A stretch of DNA of 63,742 nucleotides, filler included, from Octopus bimaculoides (taxonomy: Eukaryota): assembly GCF_001194135.2 (NCBI RefSeq). It is 6 parts of 6 records of this genome, joined end to end, with 100 filler letters (N's around TTAATTAATTAA, not from the genome) between each part and the next. Parts side by side here need not be neighbours in the genome. Positions count along the whole stretch, not along the records: positions 49,204 to 62,122 come from NC_069003.1; 5 more parts are not named here. One strand, given 5' to 3'. Positions 42,046 through 62,122 of the stretch are shown piece after piece. The position numbers and the translations under genes are program-made. Numbering within the stretch: position 1 is the stretch's first letter; each line of letters opens with the position of its first letter. The notes below the pieces were generated by a model that saw only the letters and a list, made by a program, of their open reading frames with translations, was not told where the DNA came from and ran no database searches.

Positions 42046-42462
42046 GCTCAGCGGCATTTCGTCCGCCTTTAAGTTCCGAATTCAAATTCCACTGAGGGTC
42101 AACTTTGCCTTTCATTCTTTTGGGGTCACTAAAATAAATACCAATTGAGGACTGGGGTTGAAGTCATCAACTTAGCTCCACTTCTGAAATTGCTGCCCTT
42201 GTGCCAAAATTCGAGACCAATAGTTACAATCGAGAGATAGGTGGCGAACTGGCGGAATCGTTAGCATGCCGGACAAAATGCTTAGCGGTATTTGGTCCGT
42301 CTTTATGTTCTGAATTCAAATTCTGCCGAGGTCGACTTTGCCTTTCATCCTTTTGAGGTCGCTAAAATAAGTACCAGTTGAGCACTGGGGTCGGTCTAAT
42401 CGACTGAAGCCCTCCTCCGAAACTGTTGGCATTGTGCCAAAGTTTGCAACCAATAATTATAA
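42046..42462 (+). mobile_element. Two tandem family-A SINE copies
   Basis: 42046-42220 and 42238-42462 both match the family-A consensus. Confidence 0.8.
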
Positions 42463-43610
42463 TTGAGAGAGATGTGGCTGCTATTTCTAACAGGTCGAGA
42501 GACCGCGTGTAGGGCAACTAACTCCACTAACATCGGTTGTCCAACGATGGTGGCTGGACAAACACAAACTCAAAGACACATGCACATAAATACACATACG
42601 CAAACACACATATGACCGGCTTCTTTCAGTTTCTATCTACCAAATCCACTCACAAAGCTTTAATTGGCCCGAAGCTGTAGTAGGGACTGAACCAGGAACT
42701 ATGTGGTTGGGAAGCATGTATGTATGTATGTATGTATGTATGTATGCATGTAAGTATGTATATATCTTCGTATGTATGTAGATGCATTCGTACATTCTAT
42801 GCATTTATGCATATATGTATATACAGTCATATATACATAAATTCAATACATACATACATACATAAAAATTAGGGTTCTCAAAACCTGAAAGAAAAAGGCT
42901 GATTAGAAGACTACAGATTCAAGCCATCAATGGAACTGTAAAGATATGTAAAACTTTCCAAAAATTTACCACATAAATACATATGCATGCGTCTAAAACG
43001 CATCCATAAAACAAACATGCAAATCTGCGCATACACTAACACCAAATACTGCACACATACACATATGCACAAATACCTAGATGATGTTGATAAAAGTTCC
43101 AATGAAGGAGCCTTGAATCTATGTTAGAGTCCGGCTCTTTCTCTATGGACAAGAAATACAGAAATGAAACTGATTGATAACATACATACATACATACATA
43201 CATCTAAACAGACACATATCAATTTGCATGCCAAATTCTATAACCCAAATGTTTTTCCGCTCTGCTACTTAAAGCCGGTAAGCTAGTCGAAGCTCCATCA
43301 ATTCTCTTGTGACCACGCTTGGCACCGAATGTACTTCTGCTCTGACCGAAAACACGTGACCGAAAAAAGGTGGTGGATTCACTGTCGGTTTCGACGATAA
43401 GCATTCAAATCGTTCGATCATCTGGATTCCTGCATGCATAATTACTGTAAAAATCGGTGAGTAGTCCAGTGCATAGGCGTGTAATACTGAATGTAATTTT
43501 GAGGCAGAATCGGCGTGGTATTACGAGACAAAGCTGGATCATTGGTTTACAGATGCAGTCCAAAGAGAGATAGCGATAGATAGAGGTAGAGAGAGAAAGA
43601 GAAGAGAGTT

Positions 43611-57273: not shown

Positions 57274-57369
57274 TGAAACGAGAGTATAGCTTTTGTTTTT
57301 CTGTACCAATTCTTTGGCTGCTTTCTCTGCAATGTGTGATGCTTTGACAGGAGCTTGTTTGTGTGGTAC
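57211..57369 (-). CDS. DHX16: DHX16 coding exon 2 (53 aa, contains poly-Asp11)
   Basis: ttttcag|GTA CCA CAC...AAG|gtaagt. VPHKQAPVKASHIAEKAAKELVQKNKSYTL matches human [30 protein letters not shown]. Phase 0-0. Confidence 0.92.
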
Positions 57370-58126
57370 CTGAAAACAGCATCGCAATCATCATTAACCA
57401 ACATCATTATAAATACGATTACAATCAGCAAGAAAATCTTCATTTTAAAGCGAATGAGAGAGCCTCCACATAGCTGCTTAAAATAGCAATGAAATGTCCC
57501 TTGAATTACACCCTGCCACAGTGCTTCTCAAATAATGTCATCATCATTATCCTTTAGCATCCGTTTTCCATGCTGGCATGGGTAAGATGGTTCCACTGGA
57601 ACTGGTAAAACAGAGAACTGCACCAGGCTCCAGTCTGTTTTGGTTTGGTTTTTATGGCTGGATGCCCACCCCCAGAGAGTACCAGATATCTTCTAGATCC
57701 TGTTGCATTTTACAATTTTTTAAGTATATTATATCCTTGGTTATACAATATTAAACTATTACTTAGCTGTTTTACCTGTTTTCTTCTTGCTTATCAGATG
57801 AAAAAAAAAAAGAGAAAGCTGCCTTTGCAATAATAGCTGAATGTCCTTCATACTATGTAGCACCTATTTTATTCTAGTCAGTTAAACCTAGTGGGGTTAT
57901 GTGAATCTAGCTCAGTAGCACAATAAAATAATTAAACCAGCAAGGTTTGAATTCATTAACATACATAAGATAATCCAGTGCCTTCAGTTTCAACCGCAAT
58001 TGCATATATAAACACACATTCTTACATATGAGTGAACTCGGGTAATAACACTCTTAGATGAAGAATGTGGTAGATTGTTTTGTGGTCTTTTCTAGATAAG
58101 TGATACAACTCTCAAATTATATAGAA

Positions 58127-58423
58127 CAGGGGTTTTCAAACTGTGGTCCGCGGACCACAGGGGGTCCGTGGAAAGCCAAGACAGGGGGTCCGTGCAGAGC
58201 CAAGCAAGTACATCCTTCTCAGTAAGTATGTATTAAAAAAATCCTGTGTGTATAATTGACAATAAACCTATTTGTTAAATACTGTTAAATAAATAAATGT
58301 AAAAGTATATGTTATTTTAAGCAAATATCTATGTATAAATTTCATAAGCGTTTATAAGGGGGTCTCTAAGGTAAAGCCTGAAATATAAAGGGGTCCACAA
58401 GTCAAAAAGTTTGAAAACCCCTG
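58127..58423. mobile_element. Complete hAT-type MITE, 297 bp, in DHX16 intron 1
   Basis: Perfect 16-bp TIRs CAGGGGTTTTCAAACT and a perfect 8-bp TSD ATATAGAA (58119-58126 and 58424-58431). Confidence 0.93.
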
Positions 58424-59499
58424 ATATAGAACACTACTATATAATGATGTGAGACAGGGGAACTCGTATTCACTCTTAGGTTAACTGAAAATTCAGATAT
58501 CACTTCTCACTGCTCTTTCTCATAACTATTCTCCCTCTCGTTTGCAAATTGTTATAAACATACGACACCAGCAGCCAACAAAGGAGCTTCCAGCAACCAA
58601 GTTCCATCGATTGTCTTAAAAGAAAGAAAGGCCACATTGGAAAATGCAATTCCAGATATATAATAAGATAGGATGGTCATGGATGGAATGCCTATGCTAA
58701 TATATCTGTTCAATCAAGTTTCACCTACAACTAGACAATGCATAGGGAAAGCCTGAAATAAAAAGTATAAGCAAACTATAGCTTGAAGATGAAATTCATG
58801 ATAGCAGCTGACACATATATTTCAATCATAAAAATATATTACGNNNNNNNNNNNNNNNNNNNNNNNNNNNNNNNNNNNNNNNNNNNNNNNNNNNNNNNNN
58901 NNNNNNNNNNNNNNNNNNNNNNNNNNNNNNNNNNNNNNNNNNNNNNNNNNNNNNNNNNNNNNNNNNNNNNNNNNNNNNNNNNNNNNNNNNNNNNNNNNNN
59001 NNNNNNNNNNNNNNNNNNNNNNNNNNNNNNNNNNNNNNNNNNNNNNNNNNNNNNNNNNNNNNNNNNNNNNNNNNNNNNNNNNNNNNNNNNNNNNNNNNNN
59101 NNNNNNNNNNNNNNNNNNNNNNNNNNNNNNNNNNNNNNNNNNNNNNNNNNNNNNNNNNNNNNNNNNNNNNNNNNNNNNNNNNNNNNNNNNNNNNNNNNNN
59201 NNNNNNNNNNNNNNNNNNNNNNNNNNNNNNNNNNNNNNNNNNNNNNNNNNNNNNNNNNNNNNNNNNNNNNNNNNNNNNNNNNNNNNNNNNNNNNNNNNNN
59301 NNNNNNNNNNNNNNNNNNNNNNNNNNNNNNNNNNNNNNNNNNNNNNNNNNNNNNNNNNNNNNNNNNNNNNNNNNNNNNNNNNNNNNNNNNNNNNNNNNNN
59401 NNNNNNNNNNNNNNNNNNNNNNNNNNNNNNNNNNNNNNNNNNNNNNNNNNNNNNNNNNNNNNNNNNNNNNNNNNNNNNNNNNNNNNTCCAACCTTAGTG

Positions 59500-59505
59500 T
59501 TTAAT
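59500..59505 (-). terminator. Possible poly(A) signal (ATTAAA) for THUMPD3
   Basis: Variant hexamer ~130 nt after the stop in a U-rich 3' region; a gap begins 13 nt further on. Confidence 0.3.
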
Positions 59506-59632
59506 GATTGTAAATGGATTGATGCCAGTGAAAAAGGAAATAGAAAGAATATAAAACTAAACACAATAAAAATTTTTTAAAATAAAGAGAAAAAGTTCAA
59601 TGTAAAAATATGTGGATTCATTAGATCCCATT

Positions 59633-61224
59633 TTACAGATCTGGAATTTGATTGTCTGGAACTGGCATTTCTTGAGGACAGTTTTCTGGTAGTGGAGAAT
59701 GCCACAGAGTTGAAACTGGAGCTCCAGAAAGCTTAGCAGATGTTCTTCGGAATAACCACACACCAGCAGCCAGCCCGCCAATGTTCACCCAAAGGTAAGA
59801 CTGTTTCTTCCAGTATTTGGCAAAATGCTGCATACACTTAAACATGCACTTTTTGTCCTGGGTAAGAAGACAGGCCCGACCAGTGTTCAGCTTGGCAACC
59901 CGTGCCATTTCATACATTACTGCAGGATATAATTTCCAGTTGTTTTTCTTTGAGCCACTTCTTTTCCCGAATGGCAAGTCAGTGATGAAAACATCTACAC
60001 TGTGGCTGGCAAGTGGCAAATGACAAGCATCCCATTTGAAAACATCGATACCAAGCTGAGGCAGCATCTTCTCTTTCCGTTGCTCATTCACAGCATTAAT
60101 GTTACCTTCAATTTTTTCCATCGCTCTATGATGAATCTCCCCACATATGTTCCAGGTTTGGGGCCAACAAACTGAGGCCTGGATTGGAATTGCTCCACTT
60201 CCACACATAGGGTCACAAACAACATCTCCATCCTGAATTTTGCAAAGTCTGAGCATGTTATAGGCAGTGGTTGCACGAAGAGTTGTCGGTCCGAAATTTG
60301 TAATTAAGCGCCGGTGTAAGCTCTCTTTGGTAAGAGCAATGCTAACAGAAACACTGTCATCAACAATTCTCAGAATAACTTCAATATTGAAATTTTTCAT
60401 ATCAACATTCCATTCAAAATAAGTTTGTATTGCACCACCAAAATTCGCTGCTGCAATCATTGANNNNNNNNNNNNNNNNNNNNNNNNNNNNNNNNNNNNN
60501 NNNNNNNNNNNNNNNNNNNNNNNNNNNNNNNNNNNNNNNNNNNNNNNNNNNNNNNNNNNNNNNNNNNNNNNNNNNNNNNNNNNNNNNNNNNNNNNNNNNN
60601 NNNNNNNNNNNNNNNNNNNNNNNNNNNNNNNNNNNNNNNNNNNNNNNNNNNNNNNNNNNNNNNNNNNNNNNNNNNNNNNNNNNNNNNNNNNNNNNNNNNN
60701 NNNNNNNNNNNNNNNNNNNNNNNNNNNNNNNNNNNNNNNNNNNNNNNNNNNNNNNNNNNNNNNNNNNNNNNNNNNNNNNNNNNNNNNNNNNNNNNNNNNN
60801 NNNNNNNNNNNNNNNNNNNNNNNNNNNNTGTAACTGGCTTCTCAGAGATTGGCAAATGAAAGGAATAAACTTCAGACCAAACCGTTAAGCCCATTCTCCA
60901 ATCAACATTTTCAACTAAATATTGAAGCTGTTTCATACATCCTTCCTCGTTACTTCCAAATCCAAAATGAAGATTTTCATGAATCAAGACTGCGCAATTG
61001 TCAACACCATTTAAAGTTAGAACCTTGGACGTGTTCTTTACGGGCAAGCGTATCACTATATGTCCGTGGCCGACACGAACCTCTTCTACACCTAATACTT
61101 CTTTGGCTTCCTCACTGGCCTCTTTTTCGAAGCCGGTACACACGGTGCATTGTACTTGACACCATTCGTCGACGTTTTTATCAGTCAACATAGAAACAGC
61201 ATGACTACTCATAGGGGTCGCCAT
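59633..61224 (-). CDS. THUMPD3: THUMP domain-containing protein 3 (tRNA guanine-N2 methyltransferase); no introns in the sequenced parts; split by N gap 60464-60828
   Basis: N-terminal part (TVCTGFEKEASEEAKEVLG...VDW) and C-terminal part (AANFGGAIQTYFEWNVDMKNFNIEV...LHRRLITNFGPTTLRATTAYNMLRL, SAM-binding DPMCGSG, TDLPFGKR, WVNIGGL) match recalled human THUMPD3. An in-frame TAG lies upstream of the ATG at 61224; TAA stop at 59633-59635. The 365-N gap is about the size of the ~105 aa missing relative to human. Confidence 0.93.
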
Positions 61225-61349
61225 TTCTACGTTTTCTGATTTAAAAAAAATTTGCTTCAGTTCCTATTTGAAGTGTGTCAGTAATTTCCCTCGTTTAATC
61301 TCTAGTGCCCCACGCTGTCAAAAACAGTGGGGACCTTTGTTCTACTCTC

Positions 61350-61367
61350 CTGAAAAGGGAGGAAAAC
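61350..61367 (-). promoter_or_regulatory. Candidate 3' splice site 125 nt upstream of the THUMPD3 ATG
   Basis: Minus strand reads GTTTTCCTCCCTTTTCAG|GAGAG. No ATG occurs between this AG and the THUMPD3 start. Confidence 0.55.
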
Positions 61368-61817
61368 TTTGCATATTGTACTCTTTGATACCTAATGCTC
61401 AGACAGGACATGTTAGCTAGAGAGGAAATTTATTCTGTAAGTTCTTGATCAATTGACTCTAAAATCCCCAAAAATGGACTTTGGCATGCAAAAAAAAAAA
61501 AAAATGCAGTGACCACAAAACAGGACCTAGCTTCAGTATCACGCAGAATCTTAGCTGATGGGAACGATAGCGGCTGGCGGCATAAGTGCTCAGTTGCGGA
61601 GGTGATATCAACAGTCATTCAATACAGTATAATAGAAGACACTTGCTCAAGATGTCGTACAGTGAGACTGAACCTGGAACCATGTGGTTGGGAAGCAAAC
61701 TTCTTACCACACAGCCACTCTTGCGTCAATATATTTCTCAAATATAGCAAGCTACATGGAAATACTTTAGAATACTATTCACACACATAGGATTGCCTAA
61801 ACACGGTACAATCTACA

Positions 61818-61863
<46 letters not shown>

Positions 61864-61976
61864 GATGGGTGTGTTTAATTTTCTGATATTGAAGAGGGAA
61901 ATTTCAAGCCCTGTGACACAGAAAAATAGAAATCAAGACCTTAAGATATCAAATCATTGCGAAAGAGATAGTTTAC

Positions 61977-62122
61977 CTTGTTCCATAATTCTGAACAGAA
62001 ACTAATGACGTTGTCATCCACATCAATTGTGTTTGTATCTTCTATCCTGTTGACAAAATCCTGCGGACTGTGCGACTTGGTGCCCAGCTCAATTAAATAA
62101 AGTGAAATATATTTATCAGATA
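61977..62122 (-). CDS. DHX16: DHX16/Prp2 coding exon 1 (3' part; start codon presumably in the gap from 62123)
   Basis: Manual translation gives SDKYISLYLIELGTKSHSPQDFVNRIEDTNTIDVDDNVISFCSELWNK, then donor AAG|GTAAAC, phase 0. Resembles the recalled human DHX16 N-terminus (SERHVAQFLIG...RDTDTLDL...LWNK). Not in the ORF track. Confidence 0.85.

What the first reader, a model, noticed from the sequence alone, without database searches (positions are those of the whole stretch)
59633..62122. THUMPD3 is nested on the same strand inside intron 1 of DHX16
Seen in sequence: DHX16 exon 1 (missed by the ORF track) ends at a GT donor at 61977, and DHX16 exon 2 begins at 57369. A full-length THUMPD3 ORF (61224 to 59633) lies between them in the same orientation. 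Exon 1 and the THUMPD3 start are on gap-free contiguous sequence, so their adjacency does not depend on scaffolding. Established knowledge: most nested protein genes are antisense to their host, and human DHX16 and THUMPD3 are on different chromosomes. Both are RNA-processing factors; THUMPD3 works with TRMT112 to make tRNA m2G6/7. Inference: every DHX16 pre-mRNA carries the whole THUMPD3 ORF in sense, so intron-1 splicing and THUMPD3 3'-end formation may compete. That would couple a spliceosomal helicase to a tRNA methyltransferase. I do not know of this arrangement being described, but could not search.
Basis: partly seen in the sequence, partly recalled or inferred. Interest (0 to 1): 0.85.

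Follow-up and report, generated by a model that had tools for sequence, protein, structure and literature searches.

The report
THUMPD3 retrocopy inside octopus DHX16 intron
The THUMPD3 reading frame inside intron 1 of the Octopus bimaculoides DHX16 gene is an intronless, mRNA-derived copy that landed there only in this octopus lineage, so it is an ordinary retrocopy and not a conserved link between a splicing helicase and a tRNA methyltransferase.

Summary
The geometry is real. DHX16 coding exon 1 ends at 61977 (GT donor), exon 2 starts at 57369, and a same-strand THUMPD3 ORF lies between them. Public annotation already places a gene inside that DHX16 intron. "Full-length ORF" cannot be verified. 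A 365-N gap cuts the ORF and the two halves are out of frame as written. The gap size does fit the about 129 residues present at this point in cuttlefish THUMPD3.

It reads straight through four intron positions that Octopus vulgaris and a cuttlefish keep with canonical splice sites. In O. sinensis, THUMPD3 and DHX16 lie on different chromosomes. DHX16 intron 1 there is 1361 bp with no THUMPD3, and Argonauta hians also has none. Both flanks of window 61269-57697 align to neighbouring points of the O. sinensis intron. The 3' edge coincides with the point where similarity to two THUMPD3 source-gene loci stops.

So this is a lineage-specific processed retrocopy inserted in sense orientation. No poly(A) tail or target-site duplication is visible. 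Expression, function and survival of the source gene in O. bimaculoides are untested. Interest is low to moderate.

The parts
61977..62122 (-). DHX16 first coding exon, 3' part (codons from 62120). It is cut upstream by an assembly gap. The GT donor is at 61976-61975.
   Evidence: Translation is identical to P0155 residues 1-48. It aligns to O. sinensis L011 5061-5204 at 96% aa identity. A 1071-N gap lies directly upstream in L002.
61270..61976 (-). 5' part of DHX16 intron 1, orthologous to O. sinensis intron 1. It contains an (AT)n run and a SINE-like repeat at 61628-61734.
   Evidence: Window 62122-61270 aligns to L011 5059-5936 at 86.5%. Repeat copies are seen in L001. The (AT)n run is.
57697..61269 (-). 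Inserted THUMPD3 processed copy (leader + ORF + 3' UTR). It is about 3.57 kb as assembled, including two gaps. The 5' edge is uncertain by about 10 nt.
   Evidence: It is absent from O. sinensis intron 1, which has about 297 unrelated bp between the two alignment blocks. It is absent from Argonauta intron 1. Its 3' edge coincides with the end of similarity to source-type loci L001 and L013.
61225..61269 (-). Short 5' leader of the inserted copy, ending gtagaaATGg (A at -3, G at +4).
   Evidence: Read directly from the sequence. It is not homologous to the O. sinensis intron. The source gene's exon 1 was not available for comparison.
60829..61224 (-). THUMPD3 ORF, N-terminal 132 codons. It reads straight through the intron position that a cuttlefish has between window 60943 and 60942.
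   Evidence: ORF list. It aligns to P0128 residues 1-142 without frameshift. The cuttlefish genomic exon starts at ...ttttag|GTTGAATGTATGG.
60464..60828 (.). Assembly gap (365 N) inside the ORF. It hides the charged linker and the first half of the THUMP domain.
   Evidence: P0128 has about 129 residues here, and its THUMP match lies at residues 250-310.
59633..60463 (-). THUMPD3 ORF, C-terminal 276 codons plus stop (59635-59633). It holds the methyltransferase domain with DPMCGSG and DLPFG. It reads through three further intron positions: 60249/60248, 59961/59960 and 59837/59836.
   Evidence: Pfam UPF0020 at E=8.5e-35. PDB Trm14/Trm11-type tRNA m2G methyltransferases. Intron positions in cuttlefish L003 and O. 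vulgaris L001 have canonical AG/GT.
57697..59632 (-). 3' UTR of the inserted copy, interrupted by the 643-N gap at 58844-59486. It ends at ...GCAACAGGATC with no A-run.
   Evidence: It is collinear with the terminal exon and downstream region of O. vulgaris (L001 42604-43831; 92.5% in the first 146 nt, then about 87%) and of another octopod (L013).
58127..58423 (.). 297-bp MITE-like element inside that 3' UTR, with terminal inverted repeats and a flanking direct repeat.
   Evidence: Direct repeat ATATAGAACA at 58119-58128 and 58424-58433, and inverted arms at 58122-58142 / 58408-58428. The site is empty in L001 and L013.
57370..57696 (-). 3' part of DHX16 intron 1, orthologous to O. sinensis. 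It includes a SINE-like repeat at 57540-57667 and the ttttcag acceptor.
   Evidence: Window 57698-57066 aligns to L011 6241-6875.
57211..57369 (-). DHX16 coding exon 2 (VPHKQ...FVPKK), followed by gtaagt.
   Evidence: It is identical to P0155 residues 49-101 and matches L011 6566-6712.

Best explanation
Window 61269-57697 (minus strand) is a processed, mRNA-derived retrocopy of THUMPD3. A spliced THUMPD3 transcript, with a short leader, the whole coding region and a long 3' UTR, was reverse-transcribed and integrated in sense orientation into intron 1 of DHX16. This happened in the Octopus bimaculoides lineage after it split from O. sinensis/O. vulgaris. The retrocopy origin and the lineage-specific insertion are shown. 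Integration appears to have removed or replaced about 300 bp of the target. It left no poly(A) tail and no target-site duplication, which points to an atypical, non-L1-like or end-joining integration; that step is inferred. The readable ORF (408 codons) is intact and almost unchanged from the source gene of sister species. The copy is therefore either young or under purifying selection. I put the chance that it is a transcribed, protein-coding retrogene at about 0.45. If so, it would most likely be expressed as part of, or from the promoter of, DHX16, whose start lies about 1 kb upstream; this is inference. Nothing supports a conserved or designed coupling of DHX16 and THUMPD3.
For: 1. The copy is intronless where relatives have introns. 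O. vulgaris L001 has the exon for P0128 residues 436-477 at 9956-10081 and the terminal exon from 42392. They are 32 kb apart, with ...tttgtttag|, |gtaaga and ...tttttcag| splice sites. The cuttlefish genome L003 has one exon for residues 101-342, with ag| and |gtatgt, and no other exon within 10 kb. The window reads continuously through all four positions.

2. The site is empty in relatives. O. sinensis DHX16 intron 1 (L011 5205-6565, gap-free) and Argonauta hians intron 1 (L012 5205-5880) contain no THUMPD3 by tblastn. Window 62122-61270 aligns to L011 5059-5936, and window 57698-57066 aligns to L011 6241-6875.

3. The source locus is elsewhere. In O. sinensis, THUMPD3-like lies on a 105.9-Mb chromosome and DHX16 on the 32.9-Mb CM016881.1. 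The O. vulgaris THUMPD3 exons are on the 119-Mb OX597822.1.

4. The 3' edge is discrete and transcript-like. Similarity of the window to two source-type loci (L001, L013) stops at the same base...CAACAGGATC|. Those two loci stay similar to each other beyond it.

5. The assembly links are independent of scaffolding. Contig A holds the 5' junction and contig C holds the 3' junction. Contigs A-B-C are collinear with THUMPD3 mRNA and the source 3' region.

6. Coding state. There are 4 differences in 328 nt against the O. vulgaris exons (3 synonymous, 1 His/Tyr). There are 2 differences in 191 aa against O. sinensis, one of which is O. sinensis-specific. UTR and intron differ by 7.5-17%.
Against: There is no poly(A) tail and no target-site duplication at the junctions. 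The 5' edge could not be compared with the source gene's exon 1. All three contigs are short pieces of a gap-rich short-read assembly. No second O. bimaculoides assembly or read set was available, so an assembly artefact or a polymorphic insertion is not formally excluded. A quarter of the ORF is unread and the halves are out of frame as written. No expression data could be consulted. Polarity rests on only two outgroup loci, O. sinensis and Argonauta.
Confidence: 0.88

Rival explanations
1. A conserved nested-gene arrangement. THUMPD3 would be an ordinary resident gene of DHX16 intron 1 in cephalopods, so that splicing of the helicase pre-mRNA and 3'-end formation of the methyltransferase mRNA are functionally coupled.
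For: The same-strand nesting exists in this assembly and in its public annotation.
Against: Intron 1 is empty in O. sinensis (1361 bp) and Argonauta hians (676 bp). THUMPD3 and DHX16 are on different chromosomes in O. sinensis. THUMPD3 is multi-exonic with introns of more than 10-32 kb in O. vulgaris and a cuttlefish, with no DHX16 exon nearby.
Confidence: 0.02
2. An assembly artefact. Contigs A and B would be cDNA-derived or misplaced pieces, or contigs A and C would be chimeric joins made through the SINE-like repeats near both junctions, so no THUMPD3 sequence really lies in DHX16 intron 1.
For: The contigs are 1.3 kb and 1.0 kb long, bounded by N runs, in a short-read assembly whose gap sizes are demonstrably wrong. 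SINE-like repeats lie within 30-360 bp of both junctions. There is no poly(A) tail or target-site duplication. No second O. bimaculoides THUMPD3 locus appears in the protein collection.
Against: The two junctions lie on two different contigs. Their outer flanks align to points only about 300 bp apart in the gap-free O. sinensis intron, in the right order and orientation. The junctions themselves are not inside the repeats. cDNA contamination would not give contigs that run from intron sequence into the cDNA. An intronless 977-bp contig needs intronless template DNA.
Confidence: 0.06
3. A secondary DNA-level copy. An older THUMPD3 retrogene located elsewhere in the O. bimaculoides lineage would have been duplicated or transposed as DNA into DHX16 intron 1. 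This would explain the missing poly(A) tail and target-site duplication.
For: There is no poly(A) tail or target-site duplication, and there is an apparent target deletion of about 300 bp.
Against: The 3' edge coincides exactly with the point where similarity to two source-type loci ends. That is expected for a transcript end, not for an arbitrary DNA segment. No second intronless copy is on record.
Confidence: 0.04

Closest known systems
Processed retrocopies or retrogenes lodged in an intron of a host gene in sense orientation. From my own knowledge, examples are the CypA retrocopy in TRIM5 of owl monkeys and the Adh-derived jingwei in Drosophila. For reviews see PMC5470649 and PMC5408686.
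   Same: The copy is intronless and mRNA-derived, with UTRs. It sits inside a host intron on the host's strand. The site is empty in sister species, and the source gene is multi-exonic at another locus.
   Different: No chimeric host-retrocopy transcript is known here. Splicing DHX16 exon 1 to the candidate acceptor near 61351 would hit a stop after 15 codons (my translation of the sequence shown). No poly(A) tail or target-site duplication is present. Expression is untested.
Retrogene replacement, or 'orphan' retrogenes (amphioxus SYCP1, PMC5803294; human orphan retrogenes, PMC3548309).
   Same: The retrocopy ORF is intact and near-identical to the source. No second O. bimaculoides THUMPD3 protein is in the searched collection.
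   Different: Loss of the source gene in O. bimaculoides was not tested. Sister species clearly keep at least the 3' exons of the multi-exon gene.
THUMPD3 / Trm14-type tRNA guanine-N2 methyltransferases (THUMP + UPF0020/RlmKL-like domain).
   Same: The UPF0020 domain scores E=8.5e-35 and the DPMCGSG and DLPFG motifs are present. The best named hits are THUMP3 orthologues at 50-56% identity. PDB matches are Trm14 and Trm11.
   Different: The first half of the THUMP domain and the linker fall in the assembly gap. No activity data exist.
Classical nested genes inside host introns. From my own knowledge, examples are OMG/EVI2A/EVI2B in NF1 and F8A in F8. Most lie antisense to the host.
   Same: A whole coding unit lies inside one intron of another gene.
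   Different: This one is in sense orientation, is of demonstrable recent retroposition origin, and is confined to one lineage. Independent transcription is unknown.

Membership tests
Processed retrocopy / retrogene | Lacks the introns of a multi-exon source gene | tested here: met
   Four intron positions with canonical splice sites in O. vulgaris (L001) and cuttlefish (L003) are read through in the window at 60943/2, 60249/8, 59961/0 and 59837/6.
Processed retrocopy / retrogene | Lies at a locus different from the source gene | tested here: met
   In O. sinensis, THUMPD3-like is on a 105.9-Mb chromosome and DHX16 on the 32.9-Mb CM016881.1. The source locus in O. bimaculoides itself was not examined.
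Processed retrocopy / retrogene | Empty orthologous site in related species | tested here: met
   O. sinensis and Argonauta DHX16 intron 1 lack it, and both flanks align to O. sinensis.
Processed retrocopy / retrogene | Boundaries correspond to transcript ends (UTRs included, no promoter or flank) | tested here: inconclusive
   3' end: similarity to two source-type loci stops at one base, while those loci continue to match each other. 5' end: only 45 nt lie upstream of the ATG, but the source exon 1 was not available.
Processed retrocopy / retrogene | 3' poly(A) tract | tested here: not met
   The junction reads ...GCAACAGGATC|TAGAAGATATC with no A-run.
Processed retrocopy / retrogene | Target-site duplication | tested here: not met
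   No direct repeat is present at the two junctions. Instead, about 297 bp present in O. sinensis are missing.
Functional retrogene (as opposed to retropseudogene) | Intact ORF and evidence of purifying selection | tested here: inconclusive
   408 readable codons have no stop or frameshift. There are 3 synonymous and 1 replacement differences in 328 nt against O. vulgaris. About 122-129 codons are unread, and the copy could simply be young.
Functional retrogene (as opposed to retropseudogene) | Transcription and translation | not testable with these tools
   No RNA-seq mapping is available. No full-length Octopus THUMPD3 protein from transcript assemblies is in the collection.
THUMPD3 orthologue group | C-terminal UPF0020/RlmKL-like SAM methyltransferase domain with motif I and motif IV | tested here: met
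   PF01170 at E=8.5e-35. DPMCGSG and DLPFG are read in the translation.
THUMPD3 orthologue group | THUMP RNA-binding domain | tested here: inconclusive
   The region corresponding to the first half of the THUMP match in P0128 (residues 250-310) lies in the 365-N gap. Only the second half is readable.
THUMPD3 orthologue group | Closest named relatives are THUMPD3, not another THUMP protein | tested here: met
   Named hits are THUMP3 / THUMP domain-containing protein 3 across molluscs, hemichordates, fish and arthropods at 45-56% identity.
Nested gene within a host intron | Whole coding unit lies between two consecutive host exons that are spliced together | tested here: met
   RefSeq DHX16 protein P0155 joins ...LWNK|VPHKQ..., that is 61977 to 57369. 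The annotated 255-aa gene lies inside the DHX16 range.
Nested gene within a host intron | Arrangement conserved among related species | tested here: not met
   It is absent in O. sinensis and Argonauta hians.

The most novel reading that the evidence does not exclude
O. bimaculoides has lost, or is losing, the multi-exon source gene, so this retrocopy is its only THUMPD3. It would be expressed by riding on DHX16 transcription. In this one species, tRNA m2G6/7 methyltransferase output would then really depend on a choice between DHX16 intron-1 splicing and intronic polyadenylation. That would be a natural case of retrogene replacement into a sense-oriented host intron.
Probability: 0.15. Interest if true: 0.5.

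Novelty: new member of a known kind. Interest (0 to 1): 0.27.

Why it matters
It replaces an attractive reading, a conserved link between the spliceosome and tRNA modification, with a documented ordinary one: a single retroposition event. The evidence includes an empty site in sister species and base-level boundaries. It is a clean example of gene retroposition in a cephalopod. The integration left no poly(A) tail or target-site duplication, which bears on which reverse-transcriptase machinery makes retrocopies in these transposon-rich genomes. It is also a caution for annotation. The public models here are a truncated 255-aa product and a gap-spanning 367-aa model. The multi-exon THUMPD3 of O. 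sinensis and O. vulgaris is modelled only as fragments of 94-191 aa. If the source gene turned out to be lost in O. bimaculoides, the locus would become a usable natural experiment on sense-oriented intronic retrogenes.

Tried and rejected
1. A first protein search used only the 240 aa of DHX16 N-terminal exons. It returned only short fragments and no octopus DHX16. A 907-aa hybrid query was needed, built from the window's exons plus the human helicase core recalled from memory and used only as bait.

2. The O. sinensis THUMPD3 locus could not be read because the gene range is 429 kb. The O. vulgaris locus gave only the last two exons.

3. I looked for a poly(A) tail and a target-site duplication at both junctions and found none.

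4. I asked whether the about 297 bp present in O. sinensis at the insertion site is a repeat. No copies were found in the other loci, so deletion in O. bimaculoides versus insertion in O. sinensis stays open.

5. A BLAST run with the low-complexity filter off gave thousands of microsatellite hits and added only two short collinear blocks.

6. The tRNA scan of the piece was negative. Pfam found nothing in two repeat-like ORFs at 50209-50506.

7. Literature searches found no paper linking THUMPD3 with retrogenes, nested genes or DHX16, and no survey of retrocopies in O. bimaculoides.

8. I considered that O. sinensis might have precisely lost an ancestral nested copy. I rejected this because Argonauta also lacks it and because the multi-exon gene sits on another chromosome.
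Full report
**Source and layout.** The piece 49204-62122 is identical to Octopus bimaculoides GCA_001194135.2, chromosome CM046623.1 (37.7 Mb), positions about 22.32-22.35 Mb, reversed. It consists of three contigs separated by N runs:
- Contig A, 60829-62122.
- Contig B, 59487-60463.
- Contig C, 49204-58843.

A further 1071-N gap abuts 62122 in the record. All features discussed lie on the minus strand.

**The observation.**
- DHX16 exon 1. Frame 62120->61977 reads SDKYISLYLIELGTKSHSPQDFVNRIEDTNTIDVDDNVISFCSELWNK and is followed by gtaaac.
- DHX16 exon 2. After ttttcag at 57370, this exon starts at 57369 with VPHKQAPVK.
- The annotated junction. The RefSeq protein 'DHX16, partial' of O. bimaculoides (P0155) begins with exactly these residues and joins ...LWNK|VPHKQ.... 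O. sinensis DHX16 (P0274) has 21 more residues upstream.
- Later exons. Further DHX16 exons follow in order on contig C.
- The THUMPD3 ORF. Between exons 1 and 2 an ORF starts at ATG 61224 (132 codons to the gap). It resumes at 60463 (276 codons) and stops at 59635-59633.
- Identity of the ORF. The C-terminal half matches Pfam UPF0020 (E=8.5e-35) and solved Trm14/Trm11-type tRNA m2G methyltransferases. The best named relatives are THUMP3/THUMPD3 at 45-56% identity.
- Existing annotation. The public annotation already lists a 255-aa UPF0020 gene (P0001) inside the DHX16 gene range.

**The gap test requested by the scan's program.**
- Both edges of the 365-N run fall on codon boundaries of their own frames, but 365 = 3x121+2. 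As written, the halves are out of frame.
- Gap lengths here are poor estimates. The 643-N gap at 58844-59486 corresponds to about 310 nt in O. vulgaris and about 278 nt in another octopod.
- A full-length cuttlefish THUMPD3 (P0128, 548 aa, from spliced transcript contigs L005-L010) has about 129 residues between the residues flanking the gap. All of them lie within a single cuttlefish genomic exon.
- An uninterrupted ORF of about 530 codons is therefore plausible but unproven.
- The hidden part holds the linker and the first half of the THUMP domain.

- O. vulgaris (L001, gap-free). The exon for P0128 residues 436-477 lies at 9956-10081 and the terminal exon begins at 42392. They are 32 kb apart. 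The sites are canonical...tttgtttag|, |gtaaga and ...tatttttcag|.
- Cuttlefish genome (L003). One exon covers residues 101-342, with ...ttttag| and |gtatgt, and no other THUMPD3 exon lies within 10 kb.
- A Logan contig from a further octopod (L013). It shows the same terminal-exon acceptor.
- The window. It reads straight through all four positions: 60943/60942, 60249/60248, 59961/59960 and 59837/59836.

**The site is empty in relatives.**
- O. sinensis. DHX16 (L011, gap-free, chromosome CM016881.1, 32.9 Mb) has SSNA1 head-to-head upstream, as in O. bimaculoides. Its intron 1 is 1361 bp with no THUMPD3.
- Argonauta hians (L012). Intron 1 is 676 bp, also with no THUMPD3.
- Flanks. Window 62122-61270 aligns to L011 5059-5936 (86.5%). 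Window 57698-57066 aligns to L011 6241-6875 (82.9%). O. sinensis has about 297 unrelated bp between these blocks.
- Location of THUMPD3 in the relatives. O. sinensis THUMPD3-like lies on a different, 105.9-Mb chromosome. The O. vulgaris exons lie on the 119-Mb OX597822.1.

**Boundaries of the insertion.**
- Downstream of the stop codon, the window stays collinear with the O. vulgaris terminal exon's downstream region and with L013.
- In both comparisons the similarity ends at the same base, ...CAACAGGATC| (window 57697). The two source-type loci continue to match each other beyond it (AGCAT...TTGAAAGAAT...).
- After that base the window switches to sequence orthologous to the O. sinensis DHX16 intron.
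- This is the behaviour expected of a transcript 3' end.
- The 5' edge lies about 45 nt upstream of the ATG.
- Window 61269-57697 is therefore a cDNA-like segment (leader, ORF, about 1.9 kb of 3' UTR as assembled) inserted in sense orientation into DHX16 intron 1.

**Does this depend on scaffolding?** Very little.
- Contig A carries the 5' junction: DHX16 exon 1, orthologous intron, then THUMPD3.
- Contig C carries the 3' junction: THUMPD3 3' UTR, orthologous intron, then DHX16 exons 2 onward.
- The order A-B-C is supported by collinearity with THUMPD3 mRNA and with the source 3' region.
- A chimeric-assembly explanation would require two independent false joins that happen to map 300 bp apart in the O. 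sinensis intron. I give it about 6%.

**What does not fit a textbook L1-type retrocopy.** There is no poly(A) tract at the 3' junction and no target-site duplication. About 297 bp present in O. sinensis are missing. I infer an integration that did not depend on a poly(A) tail, or one that was accompanied by a target deletion. This remains unexplained.

**State of the copy.**
- The 408 readable codons contain no stop or frameshift.
- Against the two O. vulgaris exons there are 4 differences in 328 nt, of which 3 are synonymous and 1 is Tyr/His.
- Against 191 aa of O. sinensis there are 2 differences. In one of them the window agrees with cuttlefish, so that change is O. sinensis-specific.
- Non-coding divergence is 7.5-13% in the 3' UTR and 10-17% in DHX16 introns.
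- Roughly 6% neutral change is expected on the O. bimaculoides branch. That would give some 25 replacements in 191 codons if the copy had drifted for the whole branch. At most one is seen (inference from the figures above).
- The copy is therefore either recent or constrained.
- No second O. bimaculoides THUMPD3 protein appears among the hits or in the 90% cluster. This hints that the source gene might be missing, but it is weak evidence in a fragmented assembly.
- Expression could not be examined.

**Mechanism and consequences.**
- Shown: retroposition of THUMPD3 mRNA into DHX16 intron 1 in one lineage.
- Follows from geometry: DHX16 pre-mRNA contains the ORF and its polyadenylation-type hexamers (ATTAAA at 59505, AATAAA at 57873) in sense.
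- Inferred only: the copy has no promoter of its own. It may be transcribed from the DHX16/SSNA1 promoter region about 1 kb upstream, or within DHX16 pre-mRNA.
- Checked by hand: a strong acceptor-like site (ttttcctcccttttcag) lies near 61351. Splicing exon 1 to it would terminate after 15 codons, so a DHX16-THUMPD3 fusion protein is not predicted (my translation of the sequence shown).

**Comparison with what is known.** Retrocopies in host introns, chimeric retrogenes and retrogene replacement are well described (PMC5470649, PMC5408686, PMC3548309, PMC5803294). I found no paper on a THUMPD3 retrogene or on THUMPD3 with DHX16. This is a new member of a known kind. They do not make this locus exceptional once its origin is recognised.

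**Verdict.** The best explanation is a lineage-specific processed retrocopy (confidence 0.88). Interest is 0.27.

Noticed in passing
window 58119-58433: A 297-bp MITE-like element (58127-58423) has about 16-21-nt terminal inverted repeats (CAGGGGTTTTCAAACT...). It is flanked by a direct repeat (ATATAGAACA on the + strand). The site is empty in O. vulgaris (L001 about 43472-43478) and in L013. It sits in the retrocopy's 3' UTR, so it inserted either after retroposition or into the O. bimaculoides source gene before it.
   Followed up: partly
window 61628-61734, 57540-57667, 51937-52147, 54715-54904: SINE-like repeats have many copies on both strands in the O. vulgaris locus L001. Two of them lie within about 30-360 bp of the retrocopy junctions. 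ARAGORN finds no tRNA-like gene in them.
   Followed up: partly
window 58844-59486 and 60464-60828: The gap-length estimates of this assembly are unreliable. The 643-N gap corresponds to about 310 nt in O. vulgaris and about 278 nt in L013. The 365-N gap corresponds to about 387 nt by cuttlefish protein length.
   Followed up: yes
L011 5937-6240 (O. sinensis DHX16 intron 1): About 297 bp present in O. sinensis, exactly at the retrocopy insertion point, have no counterpart in the O. bimaculoides piece and no copies in the other loci. A target deletion at integration cannot be told apart from a later insertion in O. sinensis.
   Followed up: partly
window 57241-57273 (DHX16 exon 2): A perfect (GAT)11 run encodes 11 consecutive Asp in O. 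bimaculoides DHX16. O. sinensis has 7 Asp, and Argonauta has a short mixed Asp/Glu tract. It is a length-variable coding microsatellite.
   Followed up: no
L002 708-2620; L011 1-4496; L012 1-1891: SSNA1 lies head-to-head upstream of DHX16 in O. bimaculoides, O. sinensis and Argonauta hians. This is conserved microsynteny and a likely shared bidirectional promoter. It supports the orthology of the three DHX16 loci.
   Followed up: partly
window 59633-59960 vs L001 9958-10081 and 42392-42607: Synonymous divergence in the compared THUMPD3 coding sequence (3 synonymous changes in 109 codons) is far below the 7.5-13% seen immediately downstream in the 3' UTR. The numbers are small, and the cause (constraint on synonymous sites, or chance) is open.
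   Followed up: no
O. sinensis and O. vulgaris THUMPD3 loci; cuttlefish L003: The multi-exon THUMPD3 of the relatives is poorly modelled in public annotation. The models are 162 and 191 aa in a 429-kb gene range in O. sinensis, 94 aa in O. vulgaris, and a 241-aa single-exon model in Acanthosepion pharaonis. Cuttlefish transcripts, by contrast, encode 548 aa.
   Followed up: partly
window 51732-51948: A tandem array of about 3.3 copies of a 66-nt unit (72% matches) lies inside a DHX16 intron. It overlaps repeat-family matches in L001.
   Followed up: no
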